A stretch of DNA of 64,000 bases, taken from positions 11,470,001 to 11,534,000 of the forward strand of contig NC_043015.1 of the NCBI RefSeq assembly GCF_006345805.1. The letters run 5' to 3'. This document shows positions 224 through 60,211 of this stretch, one piece after another (within the stretch, counting starts at the first letter, position 1; each line of letters begins with the position of its first letter). The notes beneath the pieces are model-generated. The model had not been told where the DNA came from and did no database searches. It saw only the letters and a program-made list of their open reading frames with translations. The translations under genes and the position numbers were made by a program. Origin of the DNA: Octopus sinensis (Eukaryota).

Positions 224-1084
224 TGTAGATATTGAATACTGACAAAAGAGGAGGTCACCAAACTTTTGGAAAAGTATTTTTTTTTTATTTATCCATTATT
301 ATAGCGCTTTCGTTCGTTTTTGAACTAGTCAAATACTTTTTTTGTGAATGTACAAACAGGTTATTTATTTATATAAAACATATTCTTTTGTTTTGTTGAT
401 AGATAGAGAGAGAGAGAGAGAGAAAGAGAAAGAGAGAGAGAGTGGGGGAGGAAGGGAGCCCCTTCAATTTTGACTTCTATTCATTTACTTAATCATTTAC
501 CATTCTATTGAAATGAGTTCAAGGATGGTGATCACCCCTAGGATGGGGTGCAGTCATCGCTGAAAGCATTTTTGTTTTTGCACAATTTTCTTTTTTACTG
601 CTTTTTCCTTTTTTCCTTTTTATCTTATGGTGCCAGAGGGAAGGTAAACTGTTCTATGAAAATTTAAATATATATGTATGTGTGTGTGAGTGTTTGCGTG
701 TGTATTTATGTGTTCCTGTGAGTTCTTGCGTTTGGAAAGATGTCTATGTATACACTGTAATTTCGATGTTTTGTATTGAAAATTAAAGTTAGTTTTCTTT
801 TAATTTCGTATTTTTGTATGAAAAAAACATCAGTATAATATTCACAAATTAGAAAAATAAATTCCCGTGTTATAGAGATGAGCATCATGCTATAAATATT
901 GGAGTAGAAACAACAGAAATAGTGTATTTTTTCTTTCCTTAAGGTGTTTTTCAATTTTTGGTTTTGCATGGACAAACGATGTTTACAAGTTAGAAACATA
1001 CGTAATGCTAGAGTATCACAATGCATATAATATATATATACATATATATATTATTATATTTTTTATCGTATTAATATTTGTGTA

Positions 1085-1366
1085 ACATTGTCCGTTTTTT
1101 TTTTTTCGTCCTCGTTTATGTATACATTCGATGCTTTCTTCAAAGGAATCTAATACTCTTAGCTTAGTTTTTCCTTGGGGCTAACCAGATTGGATCAATC
1201 TCAAGAATAATCAGCCGAAATTGCGAGGATAATCTGGTGCTTGACTGAAGAAAGAAAACTTCGAATGACCCGTACTTGTTTTCTTTGTATCGTTTATCTG
1301 GATGTTTTGCTGTTCCTTCTTGTATCACTTAACTGTCCGGATATTTTGCGTCCTTGTCACATTTTG

Positions 1367-1367
<1 letters not shown>
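1085..1367 (+). mobile_element. Repeat terminus ending in (TA)n, probably a PLE terminal (pLTR) fragment
   Basis: atcagccgaaattgcgaggat...cttgactgaaga...ttcgaatgacccgt...ttttgcgtccttgtcacattttgtatt(at)n is homologous to the reverse complement of 18608-18737. PLE assignment is inferred from adjacency to PLE sequence. Confidence 0.5.
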
Positions 1368-1400
<33 letters not shown>

Positions 1401-1559
1401 GCGTACGTACACTTTGTTCTCTCTCTATATATATATAGAGAGAGGTAGATAGATAGATTCGGATGAATATCGTACTTGAGGCACCAGAATTTAGTACGAT
1501 ATTATCCATACACTTTCAAAGTAAGGTTATTAAAATCAAATTAAACAACAAGGATATCC

Positions 1560-3110
1560 AGAGGTAATGCAGTACGATCGTTTCATGCAACAGGTGCATC
1601 TTGCCATGCTGTATGGGGTGTTTCTTTGTGTGATAGATGGCAAGTAGTAATTTAAATATTGGTGTATGTCATTTTTTTTGTTTTTTGTTTTTTGTAAAAT
1701 ATGTCTGTCGTGACTGTGGAGTTCTGTATTTTTATGTGGCTATCCAGGAATGGTTATTCATGGTAACTGGATTCTGTCGTGAATTTGATGGATGGGTGAT
1801 TGTGTTCAGTGTATTATTAAATATACTTAGGTCCTCATTTGTTCTCTCCTAAACATTGACGCAATCATCAAGGAAGCGTTTCCACTTTTTAATTGTATAT
1901 TTTTTATAATCCTGATCAAAAGTCTTCTCTACTTCCTCATAAGGTTTTTCTTCCAAGTAATCTATGACAAAGTTCGTATATGAGGGTGCAAACCGCGCTC
2001 CCATGGCCGTGCCTTTTGTGACGATATGACTTGTTATCGAATCTAAAGGTATTATTTCTAGTACCAGGCCTTGGTGATGAAGTCAGTCTTGAAGCATTCA
2101 TTTATCTGACCTCTATGTTTCTGTACCCAGATCTTGACTGCTTCCAGGACTAAAGTGTGAGGTATATTGATATAACGATTGGTTGACATTAAAATGTGTA
2201 AGTATAGTCCCTTCTGGGACAGTGGGTGGGAGGTGCAGGATGGAGTCTTTTCCATCCCGTATATAACTAGGTTTTGAAGGATACAAAGCTTTTAGGGGTA
2301 TATCTAAAAAGTGACTAAGTTGGTTTGTTGGTGCAGCACCAATATGGGTCTTAGTTTGAGGTCAGCAGGCCTTAATAGTTTTATGTATTTGTTCTTCTGC
2401 GTATGTATGGCATTTTGTATTTCGGAGCTTTTGTGTATTTTGAACAATCCGTAGAAATTGCGCTCTTTCATTACAGAGTTGCATATGTAATATTTCTCCT
2501 TGACTGTGAAGGAAACTTGGAATTCATTGATTAGTCTTCTGATTTTATTCATTATTGTTTTTTTCTGAGTGTCTTGGGTCTTCCTTATAATAAGTTTGGT
2601 TTGTTAACATTTCCCATATTTTATCTTTATAATACTCCTTCTCCATTATTACTCTCGCCCCTCCCTTATCGGCTTCTTTTAGGATGATTGATTTGTCATT
2701 CTTCATTGTTAGTAAGGTTTCCTGTTCTTCTTCACGAAGGTTTTGTTTGTATCTCTTGGTATTTAGGGGAAATTTGGGAATTGTATCTATATACGTGTCC
2801 AAATATTTGTCCTTTCCCTTGTAGGGGGTGAAGTGTGATTTGTTTCTGACTATTGATTCATCATGTATGTCCTTATTGCCGAAAACCTGTGTCAGAGGGG
2901 GTGGTTGAAGTGTTTAATTTTACATTTTAGTTTAATGGGATTAGGGGTGGGTGTCATGGTAAAGTCAAACCAGTCAATAGACTATATATTATTCATATAA
3001 ATACAGTGTACATTTCCCTTTAGAAATTACCCCTAATAGTGGTTTTGATTTTAACTACTCCTTCTAGCGGGTTAGATGTCCTATTATGACCATCTCTTAT
3101 TTGTTTAAAT
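1560..3110 (-). mobile_element. Degenerate Penelope-like retroelement, reverse transcriptase region (frameshifted, 3'-truncated)
   Basis: Minus-strand pieces carry PLE RT motifs: NLREEEQETLLTMKNDKSIILKEADKGG (2545-2802), YGLFKIHK...LRPIL (2304-2552), an HPSIKFT..PFLD-like segment near 1750-1800, and TDIHQYLNYY..RNTPYSMAR near 1600-1670. Confidence 0.85.
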
Positions 3111-3141
3111 GTACACTGTGTTTATATATATATATATATTC

Positions 3142-3308
3142 ATATGACGGGCTTCTTTCAGTTTCCGTCTTCCAAGTCCACTCATATGGCCTTGGTCAAC
3201 CTGAGGCTATAGTAGAAGACACTTACCCAAGGTGCCACGCAGGGTGATTGAACCTGAAACCATGTGGTTGGTAAGCAAGCTACTTACAACACGGCCAATT
3301 TTGCGCCT
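3142..3308 (-). mobile_element. tRNA-headed SINE, family B (5' half)
   Basis: Reverse complement ggcgcaaaattggccgtgttgtaagtagcttgcttaccaaccacatggtttcaggttcaatc...ggaaactgaaagaagcccgtc matches the 5' half of the copies at 37971 and 46554. Confidence 0.85.
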
Positions 3309-4282
3309 ATATATCTTTATATATTCGCATATACACACACAGAGGCATACTCCGACACACACATATATAAATGTATATATATATATATAGTGCAATATTT
3401 TGGAATAAATATTTGCACACGCAACCATTTTTTAATATATGTATGTATGTATGTATATATATATGTGTGTGTGTGTTTGTGTGTGTGTGTGAGTATGTGT
3501 GTATATGTGTGTGTGTGTGTATACACGTTCTTGCATACATATATGATACATTTATATATGTGCGTGTGTAAGTGTATTTGCACGTGTGTGTATGTCTATG
3601 TGTTTGTGTGAGTGTATGTGTTTATGTGTATGTGTTTGTGTATGTATTTCGTAGAAGGAAGTTGACAGAAGCCTATGGTAAGTATATGTGTGTGTATTGG
3701 TGTGGAGGTCTGTGTTTGTTTGTGAATGTGTGTGTGTATGTGTGTGTGTTTTTTTGTTTGCGTATGCGCGAGCCTACGAGTATAAATTAAACAAGAATGC
3801 AAGAAAACATATTTGTAGAGTGAAACGAAAAACTGTTGTTGTCAGGTTGTCTCCCCGTATTCAGTGAAAACGTAGGTTAGTGTCCGCTTCGAAGCACACA
3901 AAACCAAGTTATCAATTCATCATCATTTGAATGGGAACACATAAGAGTAACTCCAACGACCGCAGCAGCAACTGCAGCAACAACGGCAACAGCCACAGAT
4001 ACAGCAACATATTGCTCCCTCAGTATTAACATTTCAATGTTAAATATAAAAGCAACGATGGCAATACAATGCATTATCATGATAAAAATTTAAACGAAAG
4101 AGAGAATGTATAGTATTGCAGTTGTATCCTAGTATCTCCTGTATGACGCTATTTTCTATTTATAACAAACGCTTCGTTGTGTGTAATATAGAATACAGCG
4201 TGACTTTAAGGAATACCAAGGGTCCCCCACTCATGTTTTTGTAAAGTGTACAAATCAATTTTTTCTATTTACAATAATTTCT

Positions 4283-4697
4283 TATTTCTTTATTGCCCAC
4301 AAGGGGCTAAACATAGAGGGGACAAACAAGGACAGACAAAGGGATTAAGTCGATTACATTGACCCCAGTGCGCAACTGCTACTTATTTATCTACCCCGAA
4401 AGGATGAAAGGCATAGTCGACCTCGGCGGAATTTGAACTCAAAACGTAACAGCAGATGAAATACCTATTTCTTTACTACCCACAAGGGGCTAAACACAGA
4501 GAGAACAAATAAGGACAGACAAAGGGATTAAGTCGATTATATCGATCCCAGTGCGTAACTGGTACTTATTTTATCGACCCCGAAAGGATGAAAGCAAAGT
4601 CGACCTCGGCGGAATTTGAACTCAGAACGTAACGGCAGATGAAATACCGCTAAGCATTTCGCCCGGCGTGCTAACGTTTCTGCCAGTTCGCCGCCTT
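4283..4697 (-). mobile_element. Family A SINE tandem: full copy 4466-4697 plus headless copy 4283-4465
   Basis: Two consecutive near-identical units tatttcttta(c/t)t(a/g)cccacaaggggctaaaca...gtcgacctcggcggaatttgaactc. Only the right unit keeps the tRNA-like head. Confidence 0.92.
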
Positions 4698-7593
4698 ACA
4701 ATAAATTCTGATAAGTAACTATGCTACTTTTTTTATGAAATTTAGTAGTCTTTTGAGTTGCTTGTCTTCATTAGTATTTAATTTCACCTTGGGAGTGAAG
4801 ATTAAGATCTAAGTCGAGTGCTACGATATTTAGGATTCAGAATATAAAACGTCTATTTTATGGCTTAGAGGAGGAAGCACGTAAACCCATAATTAAATGT
4901 GAGACCTGTAAGATAGGTAGGAAAGGAAGGAACCAGCAGAACCCGCTTTAACTTTAAGGTTCGAATTCCTGACCTGCTGAGAGCATTGTAAATCTAGATT
5001 CCTCCACTGAGTTCTATCGGCTGTTAATTTTGCACAGCCATTCTACGTGATGTTAACTGTCTTCAGGTTATTTTCAATGACCGCCGCTATCGGATCGTCG
5101 GCTTGTTCCTCTTACACATACTGACAGCTATCACTGGTGAGTTCATATGTTGCTTCGTGTAGATGGAGAATGTGGCCAACCAAAGAAAGTCGGCACTCTT
5201 TTACAATCTTTCGCAATGCCTGTGAAAGATAGCGGTGCCAAACGCGGTGAAGAAGCATGATGTGCCAGGTTGCAATGGGGTCGCATAAAAACTCAGGAAT
5301 CCCTTAAGAAATGACCGGAGAAATTCATGAGAACACTCGAAATAAGTGGATAGAGGTGGAAAATCATCACAAATTTGGGCCCTTATGAAAGTGGGAAGTG
5401 TAATAAGACATTATATTATTTATTCTGAGACGAGACAACTATACGTGTAGAGAATGCTTTCTAAAGGCTGAATTCGACAAAGAAGACCAACATATCTAGT
5501 GGTGATATTGAAAGTCTATCCTAAGAAACATCTTGTGCGGTGCACTATTGATAATCACTATTTGCTAAGTTACATAATAAACAATTAGCAGGAAATATTT
5601 CGAATGAACAAACTAAATGAATTAAGGTTTCATTGTAGCCTGTGGTCAAATCCTGAAATCTAATGTGAATTTATGCAAACATGATTCTTTAATCTGCTGG
5701 TAATTTACTAAGAATCCATGATGCAAGTATACACATATCACCCGATTCATATTGGCTCAAGAGTAAATACTTGCAACCACAGAATAAATTTGATTGAATG
5801 CTGACTTCTATATGCCTGAGTGGCCATTCATTTGATCGAACGGAAATGGGAAAGGCAAAACGGCACTAGTGGGATTTTTATTCAAAGTTTTACGCAGCGG
5901 AAATAAATATTGCAAGGCGTTTGCTACTTCAAATAAAACACCATACTATATGAATAATAAATATTTATCTATGGGTGGATATATGTGCGTAAATCTGTAT
6001 ATGTATATGAAAAGATGTTCGTGTGTATGTGTTTGTGCATGTGTGTGTCTGTACGTGTATAAGCGTATTTAATATTCATTAATTTTGAAATATATTCTTA
6101 GCAAAACCAAATAATATTTAGAGCTAAACACCAATTTTTATTGGCAAATCATGACTAGTCATTCCATTATCCAGCTTCAAGTCTAATCGAATTTCCATCA
6201 TCGTTTTTAGGTAGAGCTAAACGCAAACAACACCCACCATAACCTCATGACGTAAAACTAGCAAATTCATATCCTTGAAAGTTTATCACCAACGCTACAG
6301 CGATTAGCAAACTATTGCCACATAACCACTAACTAAAAATTTATAAGATGAAGAAAATGGTATTACTTATCAGCGTAATATCTGAGAAACCTACGACATT
6401 AGAAAGTAGCTTATCTCACAGAAATTCCAGACGACTTCTATATTACTTTAATATCTGTCAAATGACAAAGTTCAATTTTTCTGAAAATAAACCGTATGTG
6501 GCATAGGCCTTTATTTTCCCACTGAACTTTCGTATCACACAGACCGGAGTTTCAATCTAATGAACAATGTTTTTCATTCACTGTATTTCGATTATTTTTT
6601 AGCTCTTTTTTTATATAGATAATGAATAATATCAGAGCTGCGGTTTGGTTACTATAAGAATGGACTTCCTGTTATTATAGTTGATATTTGATAGTGTTCG
6701 TCGTGTTCATGTTGGTGATAAGGCTGATTGTGAGAGATGATTTTTATTTTGTGAGCGAAGATTATATTTTTACATTTATTTTAAAATATATTTTTTCCTG
6801 TCATCTTAGTCTATTCAATTTATTTTAGAGGATAAATCATCTTTTCTCTTTATTTTTTCACACACATATAACCTATATACGTGAATCTCTGTCTGAGGGA
6901 GGGGAACTACACACATATATATATAGAGAGAGAGAGAAATTGTGCGGAGAAGAAAATAATGTTCATTATAACAGCATTAACCCCTTGACCTAAAAACAAT
7001 AAGTGAGGTTGAAGACGTCTCCGACTTAATATTGTCACTTTGCAAGATATAAAGTTAGAACACCGCACTTCAAATCATTAGAAATTCTGAAATATCTGTT
7101 GGGATTCAACGGTTGATATTTGTCCTGAGCTTTCATTATTTTTGTTGTTGTTTTTTTTTTGTCAGCAAATTCATTCCTAAATTTACGGTCATCTATACCA
7201 TTTACCTCCCTTTCCAGTACATCACCCGTTTACAACATCATTTTGTCCTTTATGCAATGGATCCATCTGTGTTTTGCGTAGACTGAACTTTAAATATCAA
7301 CCACATCAATTTACCCAGTAACATAGGATCATTATGGGCTTTAAGTCCCTGTTATTTTAACTTCTTTAAAGAGGGGCTTAATTATCTTGGCACAAGCTCA
7401 AAATCTAAGCCGATGATAAAGCCACAATTTCCAGTTCATTACATTTAGTCTACCTTAATATACTAAAAGTAGAAAAATACACGACAAAGAAAAACGTTTT
7501 GCAACATGCTTTATTTACAATTTTTGTTTTGTCTGATTCACTGAAATTACATTACGAGAGATTGTTTCAATGAAAATTCTACCCGCTAGTTAT

Positions 7594-7811
7594 CACCTTG
7601 ATCACCTTGACCGACCAGTCCGTCGAGCGTCCATTTGACACCGCTGGTCACAGCACGCTGTCCACTCCTCTCTGGATCGCGCCTTTCTTATCCACGTGAT
7701 CCCAATCGTCCTCCTGAAATCGTAACTCCACCGTCGTAGAGGCCTTCCGGGTGGTCGTTTGCGCTCGCGTGGATACCACTCGACAACTGCGCGGGGCCAC
7801 TGATTATTTGA
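7594..7811 (-). mobile_element. 5'-truncated RTE-clade LINE 3' end with 13-bp target-site duplication
   Basis: ACCCGCTAGTTAT at 7581-7593 and 7812-7824. Minus strand is open: QWPRAVVEWYPRERKRPPGRPLRRWSYDFRRTIGITWIRKARSREEWTACCDQRCQMDARRTGRSR*, an RTE C-terminus, followed by a (tcaaggtga)2 tail. Confidence 0.9.
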
Positions 7812-8789
7812 ACCCGCTAGTTATAGCGGATAAAATCTATCAAATTGAAAACGATCACTTAAAAATAATCCAAAACATTATGGGATGCATGAATTTTTTT
7901 CGCTAGAAAATATGATGGTATAGTTATATTAGAATGCATTTGATGCATAGGTCTGAGTTATTAGGGCTGAGTTTGGGCCGGTTGCAAAAACCAAGAGTAT
8001 GCCAGTCGAGAAAACGGCCAAGTATTGTAGATTACATGTTTTCTTGGTTGACGACAAAAGGCACACAACTCTTTCTCAAATCACCCCCAAGCAGATTAAA
8101 GTGTGATATACATTGGTTAATGTAGTCCCCTATGTTCATATCAGTAGCGTTGTTGATGTTAACAATCATTTCATTATGAATCAATTTCATTAGTTTTGAC
8201 AAGCTGCAAAAAAAAATTCCAAGAATACAGTTTACAATTTTAGAAGGTCTTTTTGTATCCCAATCACGGAAATCATCTATACCTGTTTAATCCTCCTTTT
8301 GTCATCAAAATAAGCAAGGTGTCTATTCTTTATGTCTTCATCGGCATATGCTAGTCATCGAGATGATTATCGTGATCAACATCATCATCATCATCATTAT
8401 TATAGTCTCTATGACTTAGAAAATTACATTACTCATATCTTCAGCAGCGCAACTTCGAGAGCCCTCAGCCTTCGTGTTTTTATCTACGTACGTATCCATG
8501 ATTACTCTCAAGTTTATTCCATGTTCATGCAGATCTGTTTATTTCTCGTATCTTCACGATATTCTGTCGAACTCCCTCTTTATCATATCTTCATAAACCT
8601 ATTGTTTGGAACTTTGTAAAATTCACATCTTCAAGAGGGAACAGAAACTGGCTTGCAGTTTCTCTCATCCTCGCTATATTTCGTTTCCTATTGTACACAT
8701 TCCTTTCACTAAAATCGTGAATTTATAGAAGATTACTTTTAGCCAACTGAATGTACCCACGAGATACCCAGTATCTGCTTTGAACATTC

Positions 8790-18880: not shown

Positions 18881-19370
18881 GATTGGTCAACAAGTTGATG
18901 ACGTCTAGCTCTGCTAGAATGGACAGGATACAAACAGGGGACAGTCATTAGTCAGAATATTGATGACGTCCTTTTCTGCTTGAATAGTCACCTAACAAGT
19001 ACAGACAGGGGGCAGATCTAATGTAGCTATAAGTCGTGATTGGGCAGAATCTGGATGACGTCCCGCTCTGCATGACTAACGAAGCGACTGGTCAAAACAG
19101 GAAACAAACAAGAGGCAGATATAATGCAGCGATTGGTCAAAATAATGATGATGTCCCGTTCTACTTGACTAACGAAGCGACTGGTCAAAACAGGAAACAA
19201 ACAAGAGGGAGTTATAATGCAGCGATTGGTCAAAATAATGATGACGTCCCGTTCTACTTGATTAAAGCCACCTAACGAAACGATTGGTCAAAACATTGAT
19301 GACGTCACGCTACGCTAGATTGACCACCTAACAGGCATTATAAAACCGAGCATTTCACAAAAACTCACTA
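18881..19370 (+). promoter_or_regulatory. Six CCAAT(ATTGG)-N12-CRE(TGACGTC) modules, TATA box and Inr-like motif; probable retroelement pLTR/LTR promoter
   Basis: ATTGG at 18882, 18947 (ATTAG), 19039, 19132, 19225 and 19283, each followed after exactly 12 nt by TGACGTC (TGATGTC in module 4, full TGACGTCA in module 6). TATAAAA at 19339-19345; TCACT at 19365-19369 with its A 28 nt after the first T of TATA. Confidence 0.65.
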
Positions 19371-21586: not shown

Positions 21587-21984
21587 TCTTTATATATAAA
21601 AGTCAAGTTGTGTGTCTGTCTCCTACGATTTAGATTTCTAACTACTCCCACATTTTGCGGTGCAGTTTAACCAAAACCGGGTATCTTATAGTCGTGATTC
21701 ATATCGAGCCCTTCTGGGTATTAGCGCGCGTCTACGATGAGTCTACGATTTAAAAAAAATTTACCATCATTCTTTTCCATTTTAATGCATTTTTCGCTAT
21801 TATATAAGGGAAGTAACTCTCTAAAAATGTCTACGATGAGTCAACTATTTAAAAAAAAAATTACCATAATTTTTTTTTCCATTTTAATGCATTTTTTGCT
21901 GTTTTTTTTTGGCTATAACTCTCTAAAAAGGCTTATATAGTTATTTCCCTTACAAACCCGAGCAACGCCGGGCGATACTGCTAG
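21587..21984 (+). mobile_element. Non-autonomous Helitron (398 bp)
   Basis: A|TC 5' end, subterminal hairpin cccgagcaacgccggg, CTAG|T 3' end, no TSD. Internal ~98-bp tandem duplication at ~21731-21930. Confidence 0.88.
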
Positions 21985-40295: not shown

Positions 40296-42941
40296 CCTGG
40301 GGGAATTTCGAACCTGGGTTCCCATCCCTAAGATATTTTCCCGATGTCTGCTTAGGAGGTTATTATATCCTAGCATATGTGCTGCCTCTTTATTTTTCGT
40401 ATTTTTCAGTGGTGTTCTCTGTCTATTATTTTAACTTCATCCCCAGAACAACTGATGAAGGCTGGAGAGTATATCTGCCGACAACAAACAAGATGAGGAC
40501 AAATATCCGTGAAACATCCTCATCTCTGAAATAGAGAACTGTATTGTCTAATTGGTACGGAGCCGAAATTAGACTTCAGTGGAGACATACAGAGAAACTC
40601 CATCAGAAACTAGCTCGTCTTTCAAACCATCTAGCTTTCCTGTGTAATTGTAGAGACTCGAAGCTAATACCACCTGACTTGAATGTAATGACACCAGTGG
40701 ATTCATATAAAGCTCGAAGAGTTGCGGAAAGGGCAGGACATGCCCTCGTCCGTGAGAGGATCCATTGTAAGTAAACGACGAACTCTGAGAGAGGTTTTCT
40801 TCGTTACATAGGAGAATAACTAGAGATGATGATAGAAGGAGAATCCAAAAAGATCAGGAAAAGTCGTACGAGAAAGAATTTGAAAAGGTGAAGTCGCGCC
40901 TCATTAAGAAGTTTATGAAGCTCAAAGTTCAGAGACTGAAGTCCGTCACCCACCCGTGAAAGGAATAATTAACGTAAGTAGACGACATCTAGAAAGCTCT
41001 GAAGAAGCAATGCTAAAGAAAGGTCTCAACTTTGCGACAACCATCAAACGCATTCCATACTTGGACATAATAGACCATATTGAAGAGATAGCCATAAGGA
41101 TACCAAAAGCTCAGGGAGAAAGTTAAGGTAGAAAGTAAGACAGGTCCTAGAAAAAGCGAAACTTCCCAAACCAAACATCAATAAGGAAGAAAAGTTCGCT
41201 ATCAAAACACTACAGAGTGACAATTTCATCATAATACTTCCAGCGGACATGGGAAATGCTACAGTGGTGATGAACAAGTCTGGCCCCTCTGAAAAATTGG
41301 CAAGTCACATAAGTGATGGTAGCTACAACAAAGTAAAGAAGGACCTAACTCTGAAAACAGAGAGGAAGCTGTCACAGATCGTGATCAAGAGCAAGGATCA
41401 CTTTATACCAATGAAGTACAGAAAACTGACTCGACACTGAAGTAAGCTGCCACACATGTACGGTCTCCCTAAGATTCACAAGGATAGTATTCCATTAAGA
41501 CCTATAGTGAGCTGTAGAGGTTCAGCATGTCATCCACTGAGCCGCTTCCTTGTGGATATAATCAGTCCATTAGTAGGAAAGTCAACATCATACGTGAAGA
41601 ATTCCACCCACTTCACAGAAATGATCAAGAATACCCCCCCCCCCCATTGAATCCAAACAGATGGTGAGTCTAGATGTGATAAGTCTGTTCACCAAAGTCC
41701 CAACTTGTGAAGCACTATCGGCGATTCAAGAAAAACTGGTGACAGACACCTATCTAAAAGAACGCACTAGTATACCAATAGGAAACTTGATGGAAATTTT
41801 GACCTTCTGTGTAGAAACTACCTACTTCATAATGGATACTGATATATATCGACAATGGGAGGGTTAAACTATGGATTCGCCATTATCACCGATAATAGCC
41901 AATATTTACATGGAATACATTGAGAATTTGGCTTTAGTATCAACGCCACAAAAACTAACCCTATGGCTGCGATGCTCTGGTCCTATCAGGAAGATGTCCA
42001 AATACTGTTAGATCATGTGAACTCAATAAAGCCATCCATACAGTTTAGAATGGGAAAGGAAAAAGACAATCAGCTAGCATTCCTGGACGTATTAATAACA
42101 AGCACCAAGAATAGATCCAGGATATCCGTATACCGCACTCCGACCTTCACTGGACGATACCTCAACTACAATTCCCACCATCCATACAGTTTAAAGAGAG
42201 GGATTGCTCAGTGCATAAAACGTCGAGTAAAGAATATAAGTAGCGATCCTGATATACACCACGAAGAAATGATCAAATTAAATAACAATCTATTAAGCAA
42301 CAACTACCCCCAAAACATACTATCCACTCCAAATATGAAGAGAAGAGAGGATGAAATCAATAAACTGACCACAGTCTGTCCACCCTATGTGAAAGCCCTC
42401 TCCTAAAAGATAAAAAAGATATGCAGACCATATAACATCAGGACAGTATTCAATAGTAATACAACACTTCGCAAATAGCCCTTTCGAATAGAACCACCAA
42501 TAGAAGAGAAAATGCCCAAAGACTGCGTGTATTCCATCCCATGCAGCTCTGGTAGGTTATACAAAGGCGAACATTACCACCCCCTCAAAATAATGCTAGA
42601 GGAATATCGCAAAGCACCTGCACGAGAAAATATTAATAAATCAAGTATAGCGGATCATGTATGCAAAAACGGAGACCACCTCCCCCTGTGGGATGAAGTT
42701 AAAATAATAGACAAAGAAAACCACTGGAAAATACGAAAACAAAAAGAGGCAGCACATATACTAGGACATAATAACCTCCTAAGAAAACATATGAGTAGCG
42801 TATGGGAACCAGTATTAAGGAAAGATAGGAAAATATTAGATTTATAAGCCCTAAAATTCACTCCATAATTGCTCACGTGCATATGGCGTAGTGGTTAGGA
42901 GCTCTGGCTACTGAACCTATGCTTCCGAGTTCAGGCAGTGA

Positions 42942-42988
<47 letters not shown>

Positions 42989-43053
42989 TAATAATAATAA
43001 TAATAACAACAGCAACACATCGGGAAAATACCCAGGTTCGCAATTTCCCCAGG

Positions 43054-54588: not shown

Positions 54589-56057
54589 TCTTATTATAAA
54601 AGGCAGATTTTATCTGCCTCCCTTTGTAAGTTATAGAAATCTACAATATAGAATTTCTTCAATTACAATTTACCTAGCATTTTTAAGAGTAGAATGCATC
54701 GGGTCATGCCAGGTCCAGCTTTTAAAATTTAAGCTCCAATTAAGCAAAATTTACAGAAAACTCACATTCTGGTGTGTATGTCAAATGCTTTTCTTAGTCT
54801 GGTTTACAGCACACGCAAACGCACACACACAGTGTGCAACGAATAAAATGAAAGTAAATAGCGACAGAGTGATTTGAGGAAGACTAAACTGAAAGTATTT
54901 AAACCACTACTCAAAAAATAAAAAAACACAGCAAACAGAAACAAATAAATACATAACGATTTACTCCTCGCACAATTTCTTCAATTAGAGTGTACCCATG
55001 ATTTTTCAGAGTACTTCAGTGGGTGATGCCATAAAAAATTTCTTTCATTTTACCACCAATTAAGACAAAATTCGAGAAAACTCAATATTTTAGCATTTCA
55101 CTCCGAAAGCATTGATGTACATGTGTGCGTGCGTGAGTGTGTGTGTGTGGTGTGTGTGTGTTGTGTGTGTGTGTGTGTGTTTGATGGGTTGTGCGACACA
55201 GAAAGTGTGGTGTGTAAGTGAAGTGCTTTTGTTAGTGTGTGTAAAGAGACAGACAGAGTGAAAGACAGAAATAAGCGCGCGTAATTGAAAGTTTTCACTA
55301 TGATATCATCACGTGCGAAAAAATTCGAAGGGTTTTGAACAATTGAGATACAGATGTCACGCCTGTATTGAAACCATTGCTAAGCTGCCGTAATTGCTTA
55401 ATAAGACTTTGTTTAAATTTAAAGGGGCAAATATGTGACGAGGTTGAAAAAAAATACCCCAGAAAAAAAATATACTGCTGGTATTATATAATTCACTACT
55501 ATTTTGCTACAATGTCATGAAAAAGAAAAAAATAGGTATGTAAATCGAATTCGCCACCCCCTTTTCCCCGTTCGCGTGTTGTGTAAAGAAAATTATTATT
55601 TAAGTTTTAAAAATTATTTACTTTGTTCAAAAATATTAATATTAATTAATTTTCAAGAATTATTTAATTTTATTCTGTAAAATAGTAATTAATTCATTTA
55701 TCTGTAAATCCGCGAGGTTGTTACTCAGGCACCTAGAATGGTAACCTTCAACTAACACTATCTCCTCTGAGACCCTGCGGCGCAAGTTGACCAAAATTGA
55801 GAGTATGGTAGAAGAAGGGTTGCTCTTCCTTCCGTAGAACATAAAATTCAAATTGGACCATGTTAACACCAAAAATTATTTACATCAAAAAGATGCTTTT
55901 TTCTATGAAAATCCCTATTTTTTACGATTTTTTCACTGCTGTGTCGCCACTTTTCGGTGTATTTCGACCAGAAAAATGTTCACAAAATTTTTACTTTTCA
56001 AAATTACAATTCCAGCGGGGCGAAACAAACCCGAGCAACGCCGGGCGATACTACTAG
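54589..56057 (+). mobile_element. Non-autonomous Helitron (1469 bp)
   Basis: A|TC start inside (TA)n; ends acaaacccgagcaacgccgggcgatactaCTAG|T, the same hairpin end as the 21587 and 59704 copies; body unrelated to them. Confidence 0.85.
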
Positions 56058-56106
56058 TATATATATATATATATACGCGAGAAAGAAGCAACAAGAATGG
56101 ATAGGT

Positions 56107-56197
56107 TTTTAGTACAATCGTTTCATACAAGGACAGGCTTTATTAAAAGTTGTAAAAATTACAGCATATAAACGTGTCCCGTACTCATCAGCTAAAA
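56107..56197 (-). ncRNA. Type I hammerhead ribozyme, left-arm copy
   Basis: Exact reverse complement of 57616-57706; the predicted cleavage nucleotide A17 is at 56113. Confidence 0.8.
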
Positions 56198-57615
56198 TAC
56201 ATGTGAGTTCTCTAGACATCCTAGTGGTTGAGGCTATACTCATGAAGTAATGTAGATAATTAAGTAACATAAACAGATTTCCAAAGTTCATTAAAGTTCT
56301 TTAAAGATGATGTACAGTCTTATCACAGAATTTTAAAAAAGTTTTAATAGCATCACAGAGAAGGTGACCTAATCCATAGAGCACATATGAATTTCCAGAG
56401 ATATGATGAGGGATTATATACTCACAGAAGACAAATTTATCCATTGTTAATCACAACGAGGTGGGTCTCAATTCCTGCTTATTAGCATTACAGAGAGGGT
56501 GAATTAATCCTTTGTATAGATGCACAATTTCCAATGGTGTAGATGTAAGTTTCCAGAGAAATGAAGAGGAATTTCATATTCACAGGCGATAAATTTATCA
56601 ATGGTTGAACACAATGAGGTAGGTATCAATTCTTGTTATATGATTAGGTATTTGCCACATTAATCACATTACTGCTATTTACAAGAGGCTGTAGCTATTT
56701 AACTTTTAAAGGCTGAAGGGCTTTCTAGAGAGGCAAAGAATAGAAAGGGAAGGGAATAGAAGAAAAGAGAGGAAATAAAGGATGAGGGAGCAAAAAGGGG
56801 GGGGAAGGGGACTAAAAGAGAAGAGAAAAGGAAAAAGAGAATAAGAAGAAGAAAAAGAAAAAAGAGGAAAGAGAAAGAAATAGGGAAAGAAGGGAAAAAA
56901 GAAAAAAAGAGGGTTCTAGTTATACAGAAGAATTAGTAGACGGCAAGTCTGGTTTTAATTTACAGGCATCTAGGAACTAGAGGAGAATATTATTCTTTGG
57001 CCAGTAAAACAGCTAATTTTTGCTCCCTCCTACTTTATTTTCTCTCTTTTCTTCTATTCCCTTCCCTTTCTATTCTTTGCCTCTCTAGAAAGCCCTTCAG
57101 CCTTTAAAAGTTAAATAGCTACAGCCTCTTGTAAATAGCAGTAATGTGATTAATGTGGCAAATACCTAATCATATAACAAGAATTGATACCTACCTCATT
57201 GTGTTCAACCATTGATAAATTTATCGCCTGTGAATATGAAATTCCTCTTCATTTCTCTGGAAACTTACATCTACACCATTGGAAATTGTGCATCTATACA
57301 AAGGATTAATTCACCCTCTCTGTAATGCTAATAAGCAGGAATTGAGACCCACCTCATTGTGATTAACAATGGATAAATTTGTCTTCTGTGAGTATATAAT
57401 CCCTCATCATATCTCTGGAAATTCATATGTGCTCTATGGATTAGGTCACCTTCTCTGTGATGCTATTAAAACTTTTTTAAAATTCTGTGATAAGACTGTA
57501 CATCATCTTTAAAGAACTTTAATGAACTTTGGAAATCTGTTTATGTTACTTAATTATCTACATTACTTCATGAGTATAGCCTCAACCACTAGGATGTCTA
57601 GAGAACTCACATGTA

Positions 57616-57706
57616 TTTTAGCTGATGAGTACGGGACACGTTTATATGCTGTAATTTTTACAACTTTTAATAAAGCCTGTCCTTGTATGAAACGATTGTA
57701 CTAAAA
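57616..57706 (+). ncRNA. Type I hammerhead ribozyme, right-arm copy
   Basis: Stem I TTTTAG(57616-21)/CTAAAA(57701-06); CTGATGA 57622-28; long stem II GTACG-GGACA.../...TGTCC-TT-GTAT with inner TTTAT/ATAAA and TGTAA/TTACA helices; GAAA 57689-92; stem III AC-gatt-GT; GUA triplet, predicted cut after 57700. Confidence 0.8.
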
Positions 57707-59703
57707 ACCTATCCATTCTTGTTGCTTCTTTCTCGCTTATAATCACCCCACATTACTGTATTGTTAAAACAGTATAGTTTTTTTTTGGTGCATTTAAGTT
57801 AGGTACCATATTCAAGTAAATTCATTTAAATTAACTTGAATCTTTATTGCTTTTTATATATATATATATATATACACGCATATATATATATATATATATA
57901 TAATATATATATATATATATTATATATATATATATATATAATATACATATATATATATATATATATATAGATACATATATATATATATAATATGTATATG
58001 ATATATATTGTAGTAAAAATTTTCTAAAATCTTTTTTACCCATATATGATTAATTATTGAACATTTTTTCTGGATAATTTTCGAAATAACGCTGGTAATA
58101 ATATTTGGTTGATAACTAATAACGATTTAGGGACGTTCTATGTCTCTGTCCTGTCCGGTTGTACACTCAGTATACGATTTTTTACCTGTTGTTCTTTATT
58201 TCCAATGCATTTTTTCGTTTAAGTTTCGCATCATTAATAGCTGCAGTGAAAGCAACTAAAGCAGCACAGAGTGAACATACGAAAGTAAAAAAAAATAATA
58301 TAATTTACGACGATGGACAAAGACGAAATGGTTAAGAAACGGGGAAAATACAGGGTTAGGGCAAAAAAGACAATAAAGGTTAGTAACGCTTAGAAAACAT
58401 CGTAAAGGATATAGAAAACAGCAAATGGCAAGACATAGACATTTTTTTACGACCGGTCAGCTAGGCATCTGGCGTGAGAAAGGGAGAGAATGAAAGGATG
58501 AAATGAAAGCTGGCCACGGGTCATGTGTCAGCAGCAGGTAGAGGAGGAAGAGGGCAAGAGAGAGAGAAAAGAGGATATATATATAAAGAGAGAGAGCGGC
58601 AGAGAGAAAACGAGGGAAATTTTCCTTTACCAACGGAATTTTGCACTAAGGAAATATAACGTAACATCCTAGTTGTTGTTTTGTCTTTCTTACATCTAGA
58701 TTCATTTCTTTCTTTTCAAAATCGCACAGTATTGGCAAATTTTAACATAAAATGTCACGCAAGGCTTCCCGCAAACTCCTCCACGGTAATACAGTTGCGA
58801 CAAAATATCTCTTCGCAACTAGTATGTGTACCGATGGAAAGCATTTTAGGAACTGAAAGCAAACAATAAAATTATTAACCATACCAAGACGCTATTATCA
58901 GTTACGGTGTATCAGTGCTAAGCATTTATGTGCATAAATACAAACTTCTTACCAGTTCAAATATGTTTGGGGAAAATAATGGAACGAAATGTTGAATATA
59001 TTTTTGAGATAGACAGTGACACTTAAAATGACGAGTTGATTACGGATAGACCGTATGTTATTATAAGTCTGTTCAATCAGGCGTGGCAAGATCATAAGCA
59101 ACAAAAATGAATAATATTTGCATTTTGTATGAACTACAGTTAGTACCGCATTTTTCTAAAGAGAAGGCTGTGTCTATAAGTCGTGTCTTAAAATACAAAT
59201 CGTGTTGTATGGCAAAATGGATACTATTTAGTTTCAACCAATTTATATTCCGTGGTCAAATGTTATCGAGGTAATTTTGACTTTCGTCATTCATTCATAG
59301 ACGCTCAATAAAAATCTGTGAAATATTGAAATCGAATAAAATCCCCCGTTACCAAAATATGTAACTTGTGATTACCATATATAAAGCAGCTACTGTTTTA
59401 AATCTCTTAAGGTTTCATTCAGGAGAACATTCCGCCCCACGTCTATAATTGAGTCTCCACCTTTTCCCTTTCTATGCTACTATACTGGATTCATTTCTTT
59501 CTTTCAAAATTGCATAGTCTTGGCAAAGCTTAACATGAAAAATAGTTTCAGCTCCTAAAATAGGTTCCATCGGAAAGAAATGAATCCTTTCTATACTTTT
59601 CCGTTCCTATCCTACCATGGCGGCCTCTGCTTTTGGGAGATGATTGAATTCGAGGAGGCCCGTTCACAACTACTCCATTCATCTCTTCTCATTTTCTAAT
59701 CCA

Positions 59704-60211
59704 CTAGCAGTATCGCCCGGCGTTGCTCGGGTTTGTAAGGGAAATAACTATATAAGCATTTTTAGAGAGTTACTCCCCTTACAGATGCCAATTCGGGCTT
59801 TCTTAACCATTTCTGTTTTGGTGTCAAGCCATGAAGTCGTTGTTCTAAAAGAACGCTGGTCTCCTTGACAACGCTTTACGATGTTGATTTCCTTACACTC
59901 CCTTCCCCACAGCTTCACGAGGGAGGGAAGAAGGGAGAAGCAAACAGGTGCAGGTGTGACCATGGACACCAACTCCGCCGCCTTCGACACACGAAAAATT
60001 ATGCATTAAAATGGAATAAAAAATGATGTTAAATTATTTTTAAAATCGTAGGCTCATTGTAGACGCGCGCTAATACGTAGACGGGCTCGATATGAATCAC
60101 GACTATAAGATACCCGAATTTGGTTAAACTGCACCGCAAAATGTGGGAGTAGTTAGGAATCTAAATCGAAGGGGACAGACACTCACACAACTACAGTTTT
60201 ATATATATAGA
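59704..60211 (-). mobile_element. Non-autonomous Helitron (508 bp), same family as 21587-21984
   Basis: Reverse complement has A|TC...hairpin cccgagcaacgccggg...CTAG|T. The 5' ~200 bp and the 3' end match the 21587 copy; it has an extra ~200-bp GC-richer interior. Confidence 0.88.

What the first reader, a model, noticed from the sequence alone, without database searches (positions are those of the whole stretch)
56077..57736. 1.66-kb ORF-less foldback with an intact hammerhead ribozyme in each 720-bp arm
Seen: the arms differ at only 4 positions (three within 26 bp of the spacer, one at a CpG). Each arm carries, ~30 nt from its outer end, a full type I HHR: 6-bp stem I, CUGAUGA, 60-nt branched stem II, GAAA, stem III ACGAUUGU (self-complementary with G.U pairs, so dimer-competent) and a GUA cleavage site. 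Both copies share G10.1.U11.1, plausibly a CpG decay that predates the duplication (inference). The left end abuts the (TA)n next to a Helitron end. No RT, transposase or canonical TIR-TSD is evident. This is the best candidate for an undescribed element in the window.
Basis: partly seen in the sequence, partly recalled or inferred. Interest (0 to 1): 0.9.

Follow-up and report, generated by a model that had tools for sequence, protein, structure and literature searches.

The report
Head-to-head Penelope-like retroelement tails
The 1.66-kb palindrome is real, but it has the known insertion scar of a Penelope-like retrotransposon: two truncated copies of the element's hammerhead-bearing 3' end, joined head to head in a (TA)n microsatellite, so it is ordinary and not a new kind of element.

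Summary
Arms 56077-56796 and 57017-57736 are 720 nt each and differ at 4 positions, around a 220-nt asymmetric spacer. There is no ORF over 60 aa. Each arm carries a sequence-complete type I hammerhead (HHR) that ends 30 nt from the arm's outer end. The 'undescribed element' reading does not hold. The HHR is the minimal, dimer-dependent type published for Penelope-like elements (PLEs). Both HHRs point outward and sit near the copy's 3' end, and the left end abuts (TA)9. The literature describes PLE insertions as 5'-truncated, often with an adjacent inverted truncated copy, with the HHR near the 3' end and a preference for (TA)n. One is followed on the same strand by a third copy of the same HHR 3' half (18/20 identical, 0.02 expected). 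Related PLEs fetched from other genomes show the same architecture: three foldbacks with arms of 3573, about 2385 and 249 nt, the last ORF-less. Still open: whether the arms come from an autonomous PLE or a PLE-dependent non-coding element, whether the ribozyme cleaves, and read-level confirmation. No other copy of the arm was found anywhere I could search. It is a new member of a known kind, of low interest.

The parts
56077..56796 (-). Left arm: a truncated copy of the HHR-bearing retroelement 3' region. The element's sense strand is the - strand, so its 3' end is at 56077.
   Evidence: 99.4% reverse-complementary to 57017-57736. No coding similarity.
57017..57736 (+). Right arm: the same 3' region, with sense on the + strand and its 3' end at 57736.
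56797..57016 (.). Asymmetric 220-nt spacer. 56797-56910 continues the purine-rich tract of the left arm, and 56911-57016 is unique. It is read as the extra 5' sequence of the longer (left) copy, which is an inference.
   Evidence: The L005 spacer (222 nt) is visibly the upstream ORF continuation of one copy.
57616..57706 (+). Type I minimal hammerhead. Stem I is 57616-21/57701-06, CUGAUGA is 57622-28, helix II is 57629-88, GAA (G12-A14) is 57689-91, stem III ACGAUUGU (A15.1-U16.1) is 57692-99, A17 is at 57700, and the cut falls after A57700.
56107..56197 (-). Mirror copy of the hammerhead, identical in sequence, with the cut after A56113 on the - strand.
57701..57736 (+). 36-nt 3' terminal segment downstream of the cut. 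It is mirrored at 56077-56112 and corresponds in position to the stretch between the HHR and the reverse-transcription start in PLEs.
   Evidence: Position only. Relatives have 44-78 nt here. Sequence similarity to fragment A is not significant.
57178..57437 (+). Internal direct repeat inside the arm: two 102-nt units, 77% identical, 158 nt apart. It is mirrored at 56376-56635.
   Evidence: (D4, D5).
56058..56075 (.). (TA)9 target microsatellite abutting the left end. The right flank starts TTATAAT.
   Evidence: (TA)n is a published preferred PLE target and flanks the analogues.
1571..1606 (-). Third, deleted copy of the same hammerhead: AUGCAC-CUG-[AUGA + helix II missing]-UUGCAU-GAAA-CGAUCG-UA-CUGCAU. 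It lies directly downstream of PLE fragment A.
   Evidence: The 3' half is 18/20 identical to the arm, against 0.02 expected.
1619..2963 (-). PLE gene remnant A, covering about aa 6-460 of a roughly 740-aa RT-GIY-YIG protein. It carries the motifs KEADKGGARVIM, FYGLFKIHK and WKRFLDD and is frameshifted.
   Evidence: tblastn E=2e-54.
40962..42846 (+). PLE gene remnant B, from about aa 66 to the stop, including the GIY-YIG motif VYSIPCSSGRLYKGE. It is a more distant family and no HHR was recognised downstream.

Best explanation
The foldback is one insertion of a Penelope-like (PLE-type) retroelement. It consists of two 5'-truncated cDNA copies of the element's non-coding 3' region, joined head to head.

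Mechanism (inferred from published biochemistry):
- The PLE GIY-YIG endonuclease cut both strands of an AT-rich target, here the (TA)n next to a Helitron-like end.
- Each 3'-OH primed reverse transcription at the element RNA's internal start site, just downstream of the hammerhead.
- The two cDNAs grew toward each other and stopped early, after 720 nt and up to about 940 nt.
- They were then joined, which left the 220-nt excess of the longer copy as the 'spacer'.

This is why both outer ends are the same nucleotide of the element, both hammerheads point outward about 30 nt from the ends, and the arms are nearly identical.

The hammerhead is the minimal type I PLE variant. Its stem III is too short to fold as a monomer, so it could only cleave as a dimer of two sense RNAs and probably needs protein help. 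In this dead, ORF-less copy it has no role of its own.

It is not decided whether the source was an autonomous PLE with a long 3' UTR/pLTR or a non-coding element mobilised by PLE enzymes.
For: Shown in this window:
- The anatomy is as described.
- Stem III is an 8-nt palindrome: +1.4 kcal/mol as a monomer, -7.8 as a self-duplex.
- The host genome carries PLEs: two RT/GIY-YIG remnants lie in this window.
- The same HHR 3' half (18/20, 0.02 expected) sits within 30-80 nt downstream of remnant A on the same strand. There stem I has a different sequence that still pairs at 5 of 6 positions.

Shown in relatives:
- L003: arms 3573 nt, 100% identical, 171-nt spacer, ORFs pointing outward, HHR about 78 nt from each end, (TA)n on both sides.
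- L005: arms about 2385 nt, 222-nt spacer that continues one copy's ORF, HHR 44 nt from the end, (TA)n flanks, G10.1.U11.1.
- L009 7525-8176: ORF-less arms of 249 nt, 155-nt spacer, outward HHRs 45 nt from the ends, (TA)n.

Published:
- PLE insertions are 5'-truncated, often have an inverted truncated copy alongside, carry the HHR near the 3' end and prefer (TA)n (PMC8557442).
- Minimal HHRs with a short palindromic helix III work as dimers, and pairs of HHRs 100-700 bp apart on opposite strands have been seen (PMC4209133).
- A purified PLE protein cuts and extends both DNA strands and starts reverse transcription internally, downstream of the HHR (PMC11167929).
Against: - No second copy of the arm was found. 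It is absent from the rest of the window, the protein collection, viral contigs, two metagenome scans and prokaryotic genomes. So multi-copy status and a physical link to an RT gene of the same family are not shown.
- About 600 nt (arm) to 820 nt (with the spacer) upstream of the HHR carries no coding similarity. Relatives L003 and L005 have only about 85-95 nt between the stop codon and the HHR. The arms may therefore not come from an autonomous PLE.
- Similarity to fragment A is limited to the HHR. The tail is not significantly similar (p 0.13-0.33).
- The target-site duplication cannot be read in the TA-rich flanks.
- Rfam gives no hammerhead hit. It also misses the PLE HHRs of L003, L005, L007 and L009, so this weighs little.
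- Cleavage activity is untested.
Confidence: 0.8

Rival explanations
1. A single solo PLE tail inserted first and was later duplicated in inverted orientation by a replication or repair fold-back event. That would be palindrome formation unrelated to retrotransposition.
For: The three mismatches clustered next to the spacer resemble the more diverged inner boundaries of palindromes that are homogenised by arm-to-arm gene conversion. The spacer has no recognisable element features.
Against: A fold-back would have to copy exactly to the element's 3' terminus on both sides and place it against TA-rich flank. The same structure recurs in three independent PLE loci with different arm lengths and is described as typical of PLE insertion.
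Confidence: 0.07
2. Assembly artefact: a chimeric fold-back read or a mis-join created an inverted duplicate of a single copy.
For: PLE inverted structures are known to trouble assemblies (PMC8557442). No reads are available here.
Against: The arms differ at 4 positions and are separated by a 220-nt asymmetric, partly unique spacer. That is not the perfect, spacer-less palindrome typical of read chimeras. The architecture is biologically expected.
Confidence: 0.05
3. A DNA transposon of the foldback or long-TIR type, or a MITE-like element, whose terminal repeats happen to contain a captured hammerhead.
For: It has long, near-identical terminal inverted repeats, no ORF and TA-rich flanks.
Against: There is no transposase remnant nearby and no definable target-site duplication. 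No other copy exists in 64 kb. The repeat's terminal module is a PLE-type HHR that is also found downstream of a PLE RT in this window. The outward HHR orientation and the distance to the ends match PLE 3' ends.
Confidence: 0.04
4. A non-LTR retrozyme locus that produces circular RNA by double hammerhead cleavage.
For: It has a type I HHR, low GC and no ORF, and it co-occurs with PLEs. Retrozymes are thought to derive from PLE pLTRs (PMC7229834; bioRxiv 10.64898/2026.07.22.740005).
Against: The defining head-to-tail tandem arrangement is absent. The two HHRs lie on opposite strands, so no transcript contains two sense ribozymes and no unit-length RNA can be excised. The 720-nt arm exceeds the 170-400 nt monomer range.
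Confidence: 0.04

Closest known systems
Penelope-like element (PLE) insertions with an adjacent inverted 5'-truncated copy (Evgen'ev & Arkhipova 2005; Arkhipova 2006; Craig et al. 2021, PMC8557442). This is the canonical EN+ group with a C-terminal GIY-YIG and a CxxC-type linker, as in the homologues of window fragment A.
   Same: Head-to-head copies with their 3' ends outward, 5' truncation, the HHR a few tens of nt from the 3' end, and (TA)n at the junction. There are PLE genes in the same window, one of them followed by the same HHR 3' half.
   Different: No RT/EN coding sequence lies inside or next to the arms. The non-coding stretch upstream of the HHR is 600-820 nt, against about 90 nt in L003 and L005. 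The one-sided 30-40-bp 'tail' extension is not recognisable.
Minimal type I hammerheads of PLEs (Cervera & de la Pena 2014, PMC4209133)
   Same: The full catalytic core, a short stem III of 2 bp with a palindromic sequence that allows an 8-bp dimer helix, an open 6-bp stem I, and a helix II longer than the canonical one.
   Different: Helix II is 60 nt, far above the 6-8 bp described. The closing pair is G10.1.U11.1 instead of the usually conserved G-C, although L005 shares this. There is no separate unpaired nucleotide between A9 and 10.1.
ORF-less HHR mini-foldback in L009 (ENA ERZ25069866, ctg5091, locus 7525-8176), found here
   Same: Two near-identical ORF-less arms, a short spacer (155 nt), an outward HHR 45 nt from each outer end, and a (TA)n flank. 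A further solo copy lies nearby.
   Different: It is a different sequence family and host. The arms are 249 nt against 720 nt, and helix II is short (GGC-GAAA-GCC).
Metazoan non-LTR retrozymes (Cervera & de la Pena 2020, PMC7229834)
   Same: A non-coding, AT-rich sequence with a type I HHR, probably dependent on PLE enzymes.
   Different: The arrangement is inverted rather than tandem, no circRNA unit is possible, and the unit is longer.
L1 'twin priming' inversions (from my own knowledge, not checked here)
   Same: The second DNA strand also primes reverse transcription, which gives an inverted, truncated structure in a single event.
   Different: Twin priming gives an inversion within one copy, with no duplicated sequence. 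Here the same 720 nt are present twice.

Membership tests
Penelope-like element insertion | Reverse transcriptase of the PLE/TERT-like clade with a GIY-YIG endonuclease, in the element or in a full-length copy of the same family | tested here: inconclusive
   No coding sequence lies in the arms or spacer. PLE RT/EN remnants lie elsewhere in the window at 1619-2963(-) and 40962-42846(+). Remnant A is followed by the same HHR 3' half. Full-length copies of this exact family could not be retrieved.
Penelope-like element insertion | Hammerhead motif in the terminal repeat, near the 3' end of inserted copies | tested here: met
   The HHR ends 30 nt from each outer end. Relatives have 44-78 nt from the cut to the end. 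Fig. 1 legend of PMC8557442.
Penelope-like element insertion | 5' truncation with partial tandem and/or adjacent inverted truncated copy | tested here: met
   Two copies of 720 nt and up to 940 nt lie in inverted orientation with their 3' ends outward. The same is seen in L003, L005 and L009.
Penelope-like element insertion | AT-rich or (TA)n target preference | tested here: met
   (TA)9 abuts the left end and TTATAAT the right end.
Penelope-like element insertion | Multiple dispersed copies sharing the same 3' terminus | not testable with these tools
   The host genome is not available. There is no other copy in the window or in any searchable collection.
Hammerhead ribozyme, type I minimal (PLE) variant | Conserved core: C3 U4 G5 A6 N7 G8 A9, G12 A13 A14, A15.1-U16.1, H17 | tested here: met
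   CUGAUGA, GAAA, A57692-U57699 and A57700 are read directly and by descriptor.
Hammerhead ribozyme, type I minimal (PLE) variant | Three helices around the core, with helix III short and palindromic | tested here: met
   Stem I is 6 bp. Helix II is 5 bp + bulge + 5 bp, then an extension. Stem III is 2 bp and unstable as a monomer (+1.4 kcal/mol), or an 8-bp self-duplex at -7.8 kcal/mol.
Hammerhead ribozyme, type I minimal (PLE) variant | G10.1-C11.1 closing pair | tested here: not met
   The pair is G.U in both arms. U11.1 is also present in the fragment A copy, and G.U also occurs in the L005 HHR.
Hammerhead ribozyme, type I minimal (PLE) variant | Covariation supporting the helices | tested here: inconclusive
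   Only one diverged relative exists (fragment A). Its stem I differs at every position yet pairs at 5 of 6 (p about 0.03), and helix II is deleted there.
Hammerhead ribozyme, type I minimal (PLE) variant | Self-cleavage at the predicted site | not testable with these tools
   This needs an in vitro assay. Published PLE minimal HHRs cleave poorly and as dimers or with protein help.
Hammerhead ribozyme, type I minimal (PLE) variant | Match to Rfam hammerhead models | tested here: not met
   There is no hit even at E<=10. As a control, Rfam also misses the HHRs of L003, L005, L007 and L009.
Non-LTR retrozyme | Head-to-tail tandem repeats of 170-400 nt, each with a sense HHR, giving circRNA | tested here: not met
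   The copies are inverted, 720 nt long, and their HHRs lie on opposite strands.
TIR DNA transposon / foldback element | Terminal inverted repeats flanked by a fixed-length target-site duplication, with a transposase in autonomous copies | tested here: inconclusive
   Inverted repeats are present. No target-site duplication can be defined in the TA-rich flanks. No transposase lies nearby.

The most novel reading that the evidence does not exclude
The arm belongs to an undescribed non-coding, hammerhead-bearing family that PLE enzymes preferentially insert as hairpin-forming head-to-head pairs. The ORF-less mini-foldback in L009 would be a second example. Such loci would then act as a source of long double-stranded RNA and small RNAs directed against PLEs, or the unusually long 60-nt helix II would carry a function such as protein binding or regulation of the ribozyme.
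Probability: 0.07. Interest if true: 0.55.

Novelty: new member of a known kind. Interest (0 to 1): 0.2.

Why it matters
The main value is to annotation. ORF-less palindromes with an outward hammerhead at each end, sitting in (TA)n, should be read as Penelope-like insertion scars and not as new elements or assembly errors. The locus also fits the biochemical finding that a PLE enzyme primes reverse transcription on both DNA strands. The structure predicted by that model is seen here and in three loci from other genomes. Two minor points may interest ribozyme specialists. One is a natural PLE hammerhead with a 60-nt helix II. The other is a G10.1.U11.1 closing pair that recurs in an apparently young PLE.

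Tried and rejected
- Rfam at gathering and at E<=10 gave no hammerhead. It also fails on clear PLE HHRs, so I did not use it as evidence either way.
- The MFE fold of 57605-57720 does not give the HHR fold and has z=-0.34. Folding energy is not informative for this motif.
- I looked for relatives of the arm in several ways, and all failed:
  - exact look-up and homologue search with the 60-aa arm ORF;
  - two viral-contig scans, which gave one chance hit, L001, in GC-rich coding DNA;
  - two metagenome scans;
  - one prokaryote-genome scan, which gave 4 chance hits with no CUGAUGA;
  - a full-text search for the ribozyme sequence.
- A word-indexed protein search with PLE fragment A found nothing. 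Only the exhaustive HMMER search did.
- Pfam on 100 window ORFs did not flag the PLE RT. It was found by grepping for motifs.
- The spacer was compared with the flanks and arm ends for an internal 'tail' copy like that in L003. There is none.
- Tail homology between the arm and fragment A downstream of the cut is not significant, so I dropped it as evidence.
- No tRNA or SINE head was found.
- The host species was not identified. The best PLE protein matches are bivalves (Mytilus, Solemya) at 38-59% identity, which is too distant to name the host. My early guess of a penaeid shrimp rests only on microsatellite density and is unsupported.
Full report
THE OBSERVATION

The window contains a 1660-bp inverted repeat. 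The arms are 56077-56796 and 57017-57736, 720 nt each, separated by 220 nt. The alignment shows exactly four differences. One is a C/T at a CpG (56457 versus 57356). The other three lie within 25 nt of the spacer (56772, 56781, 56783). No ORF exceeds 60 aa, and the arm occurs nowhere else in the 64 kb.

Each arm holds a hammerhead motif. On the + strand at 57616-57706 it reads UUUUAG-CUGAUGA-(60-nt helix II)-GAAA-CGAUUG-UA|CUAAAA, with the cut after A57700. An identical mirror copy lies at 56107-56197 on the - strand. A descriptor I wrote requires the core, at least 5 bp in stem I, at least 4 bp closing helix II and a stem III. It finds only these two sites in the window, and one hit in 300 composition-preserving shuffles of the window. 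So the motif is real at the sequence level.

Three qualifications apply:
- Helix II folds as one long imperfect hairpin (5 bp, a one-nt bulge, 5 bp, then internal loops), not a branched structure. The hammerhead fold lies 2 kcal/mol above the MFE of the 91-mer.
- Stem III is only 2 bp as a monomer (+1.4 kcal/mol). It is an 8-nt palindrome that gives a -7.8 kcal/mol intermolecular helix.
- Rfam reports no hammerhead, even at E<=10. This last point carries little weight, because Rfam also misses four unambiguous PLE hammerheads that I fetched later.

WHAT THE SURROUNDINGS SHOW

The window is repeat-rich, microsatellite-dense eukaryotic DNA with about 35% GC. Pfam scans of its ORFs found only faint transposon debris.

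A motif grep then picked up KEADKGGARVIM, FYGLFKIHK and WKRFLDD on the - strand at 1.8-2.9 kb. These are signature motifs of Penelope-like element (PLE) reverse transcriptases. An exhaustive HMMER search with one 122-aa piece returned 1048 relatives. [quoted passage not shown] Their alignment consensus carries the same motifs.

tblastn with these proteins maps two PLE gene remnants in the window:
- Fragment A, 1619-2963 on the - strand, covers about aa 6-460 (E=2e-54).
- Fragment B, 40962-42846 on the + strand, runs through the GIY-YIG motif to its stop codon.

Nothing maps to the foldback itself. The nearest named relatives are from bivalves at only 38-59% identity, so the host genome is not in the protein collection and the host stays unidentified.

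THE LINK BETWEEN THE ARMS AND PLEs

Within 30-80 nt downstream of the last coding match of fragment A, on the same strand, lies TTGCATGAAACGATCGTACT (1571-1590). It is 18/20 identical to the arm's TTGTATGAAACGATTGTACT. A search allowing up to 3 mismatches finds only these three sites in the window, against 0.02 expected.

Read in context, this third copy is AUGCAC-CUG-[deletion]-UUGCAU-GAAA-CGAUCG-UA|CUGCAU. Four things follow:
- It keeps the first three core nucleotides, the 3' strand of helix II, the GAAA box, a perfectly palindromic stem III and the GUA cut site.
- It has lost AUGA and most of helix II.
- Its stem I differs from the arm's at every position yet still pairs at 5 of 6 positions. 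That is modest covariation, about 0.03 by chance.
- It shares U11.1 with the arms. The G.U closing pair is therefore a family trait and not decay in this particular copy.

Similarity downstream of the cut is not significant (p 0.13-0.33), and I do not rely on it.

COMPARISON WITH THE LITERATURE

- Craig et al. 2021 (PMC8557442) describe PLE insertions as highly 5'-truncated. An inverted 5'-truncated copy often lies immediately adjacent and forms inverted repeats. An optional 30-40-bp tail may be present, the hammerhead lies near the 3' end, and (TA)n is a preferred target.
- Cervera and de la Pena 2014 (PMC4209133) describe the PLE hammerheads. They are minimal type I motifs with a long helix II and a 1-2-bp helix III with a palindromic loop. 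They work as dimers and cleave poorly in vitro. The authors also saw pairs of such motifs 100-700 bp apart on opposite strands.
- Frangieh et al. 2024 (PMC11167929) worked with a purified PLE protein. It cleaves and extends both DNA strands at AT-rich sites. Reverse transcription starts internally, a few tens of nt downstream of the hammerhead. Ribozyme activity is protein-assisted and dispensable for insertion in vitro.

The window's structure fits all of this: two copies with outward 3' ends that stop at the same nucleotide, an HHR 30 nt from each end, and (TA)9 on the left with TTATAAT on the right.

INDEPENDENT ANALOGUES

From the PLE relatives I fetched genomic loci.
- L003 is a perfect foldback with arms 1066-4638 and 4810-8382 and a 171-nt spacer. 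The 731-aa ORFs point outward. The hammerhead is CUGACGA-GCUCAGC-GAAA-CGCG-UU, about 78 nt from each end, and (TA)n lies on both sides.
- L005 has arms of about 2385 nt and a 222-nt spacer. That spacer is visibly the upstream ORF continuation of one copy. Its hammerhead is closed by G10.1.U11.1 and lies 44 nt from the end, next to (TA)n.
- L009 has a single PLE ending in (TA)n. Beside it lies an ORF-less mini-foldback at 7525-8176, with 249-nt arms, a 155-nt spacer and outward hammerheads 45 nt from the ends, again at (TA)n. A further solo copy lies 1.5 kb away.

Of the six loci taken from long contigs, two hold a head-to-head pair of ORF-bearing copies. A third holds the ORF-less mini-foldback beside a single PLE.

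MECHANISM AND WHAT REMAINS OPEN

The best reading is a single dual-strand target-primed insertion. It produced two truncated cDNAs of the same RNA, and the 220-nt spacer is the excess of the longer (left) copy. The purine tract of the left arm runs on into the spacer, as the ORF does in L005. The three mismatches beside the junction may come from the joining step, or from escape from arm-to-arm conversion. I cannot tell which.

Not shown:
- that the arm is multi-copy;
- that a full-length copy of this family encodes RT-EN. The 600-820 nt of non-coding sequence upstream of the HHR is far longer than the roughly 90 nt in L003 and L005. The source may therefore be a non-autonomous, PLE-dependent element, as recently argued for animal retrozymes;
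- that the ribozyme cleaves;
- that reads support the assembly.

It is not a retrozyme locus in the strict sense. The two ribozymes are on opposite strands, so no unit-length RNA can be released.

VERDICT

This is a new family member of a known kind of structure and not an undescribed element, and its interest is low. The most novel surviving reading has about 7% probability. It is that PLE-made hairpin loci of a non-coding HHR family have a function of their own, for example as small-RNA sources.

Noticed in passing
window 1571-2963 (- strand): A decayed Penelope-like element. The RT remnant (about aa 6-460) is frameshifted. It joins, after an A-rich stretch, to a hammerhead that has lost AUGA and helix II. 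At least about 0.9 kb (the rest of RT, EN and UTR) is missing between them.
   Followed up: yes
window 40962-42846 (+ strand), downstream to 43100: A second, more divergent PLE remnant that includes the GIY-YIG domain and its stop codon, followed by (AAT)n at 42946-43006. No hammerhead was recognised downstream by either descriptor.
   Followed up: partly
window 56020-56057 (+), 21947-21984 (+), 59704-59741 (-): Three copies of a 38-nt terminus, ACAAACCCGAGCAACGCCGGGCGATACT(A/G)CTAG, each followed by T and then by unrelated sequence. The two other copies also share about 40 nt upstream of it. This is consistent with Helitron 3' ends, and two of the three are followed by TA-rich sequence.
   Followed up: partly
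L009 7525-8176 and 9642-10033: An ORF-less head-to-head pair (249-nt arms, 98.8% identical, 155-nt spacer) with outward minimal hammerheads, CUGAAGA-A-GGCGAAAGCC-GAAA-GCGC-UC, next to (TA)n. There is also a solo copy at 89% identity. This small HHR-bearing family lies beside a full PLE in another genome.
   Followed up: partly
L003 1046-1115 and 4641-4710: The spacer of this PLE foldback contains an inverted copy of the element's last ~45 nt plus ~25 nt of the left target flank. The joining step can therefore copy tail and target sequence into the centre. Nothing comparable is seen in the window's spacer.
   Followed up: partly
L005 8267-8297: The hammerhead of a PLE with intact ORFs and near-identical arms has helix II GCCGC-AACA-GCGGU, which gives G10.1.U11.1. 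This suggests the wobble pair is tolerated in apparently young PLE copies.
   Followed up: no
window 57737-58008: The right arm is followed by 118 nt of unique sequence and then a long imperfect (TA)n at 57855-58008. I could not decide whether the 118 nt is ordinary flank or belongs to the insertion as an extension.
   Followed up: no
window 4283-4648, 19054-19265 and 21730-21929: Tandem duplications with periods of 183, 93 and 102 nt. Microsatellites are very dense throughout the window, including (TA)n, (AGT)n, (CTT)n and (ATA)n. The host species was not identified.
   Followed up: no
P0221, P0191, P0199, P0236: Several PLE proteins are deposited under bacterial symbiont names (Solemya velum gill symbiont, Candidatus Thiodiazotropha endolucinida). 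These are almost certainly host-derived contigs inside symbiont assemblies.
   Followed up: no
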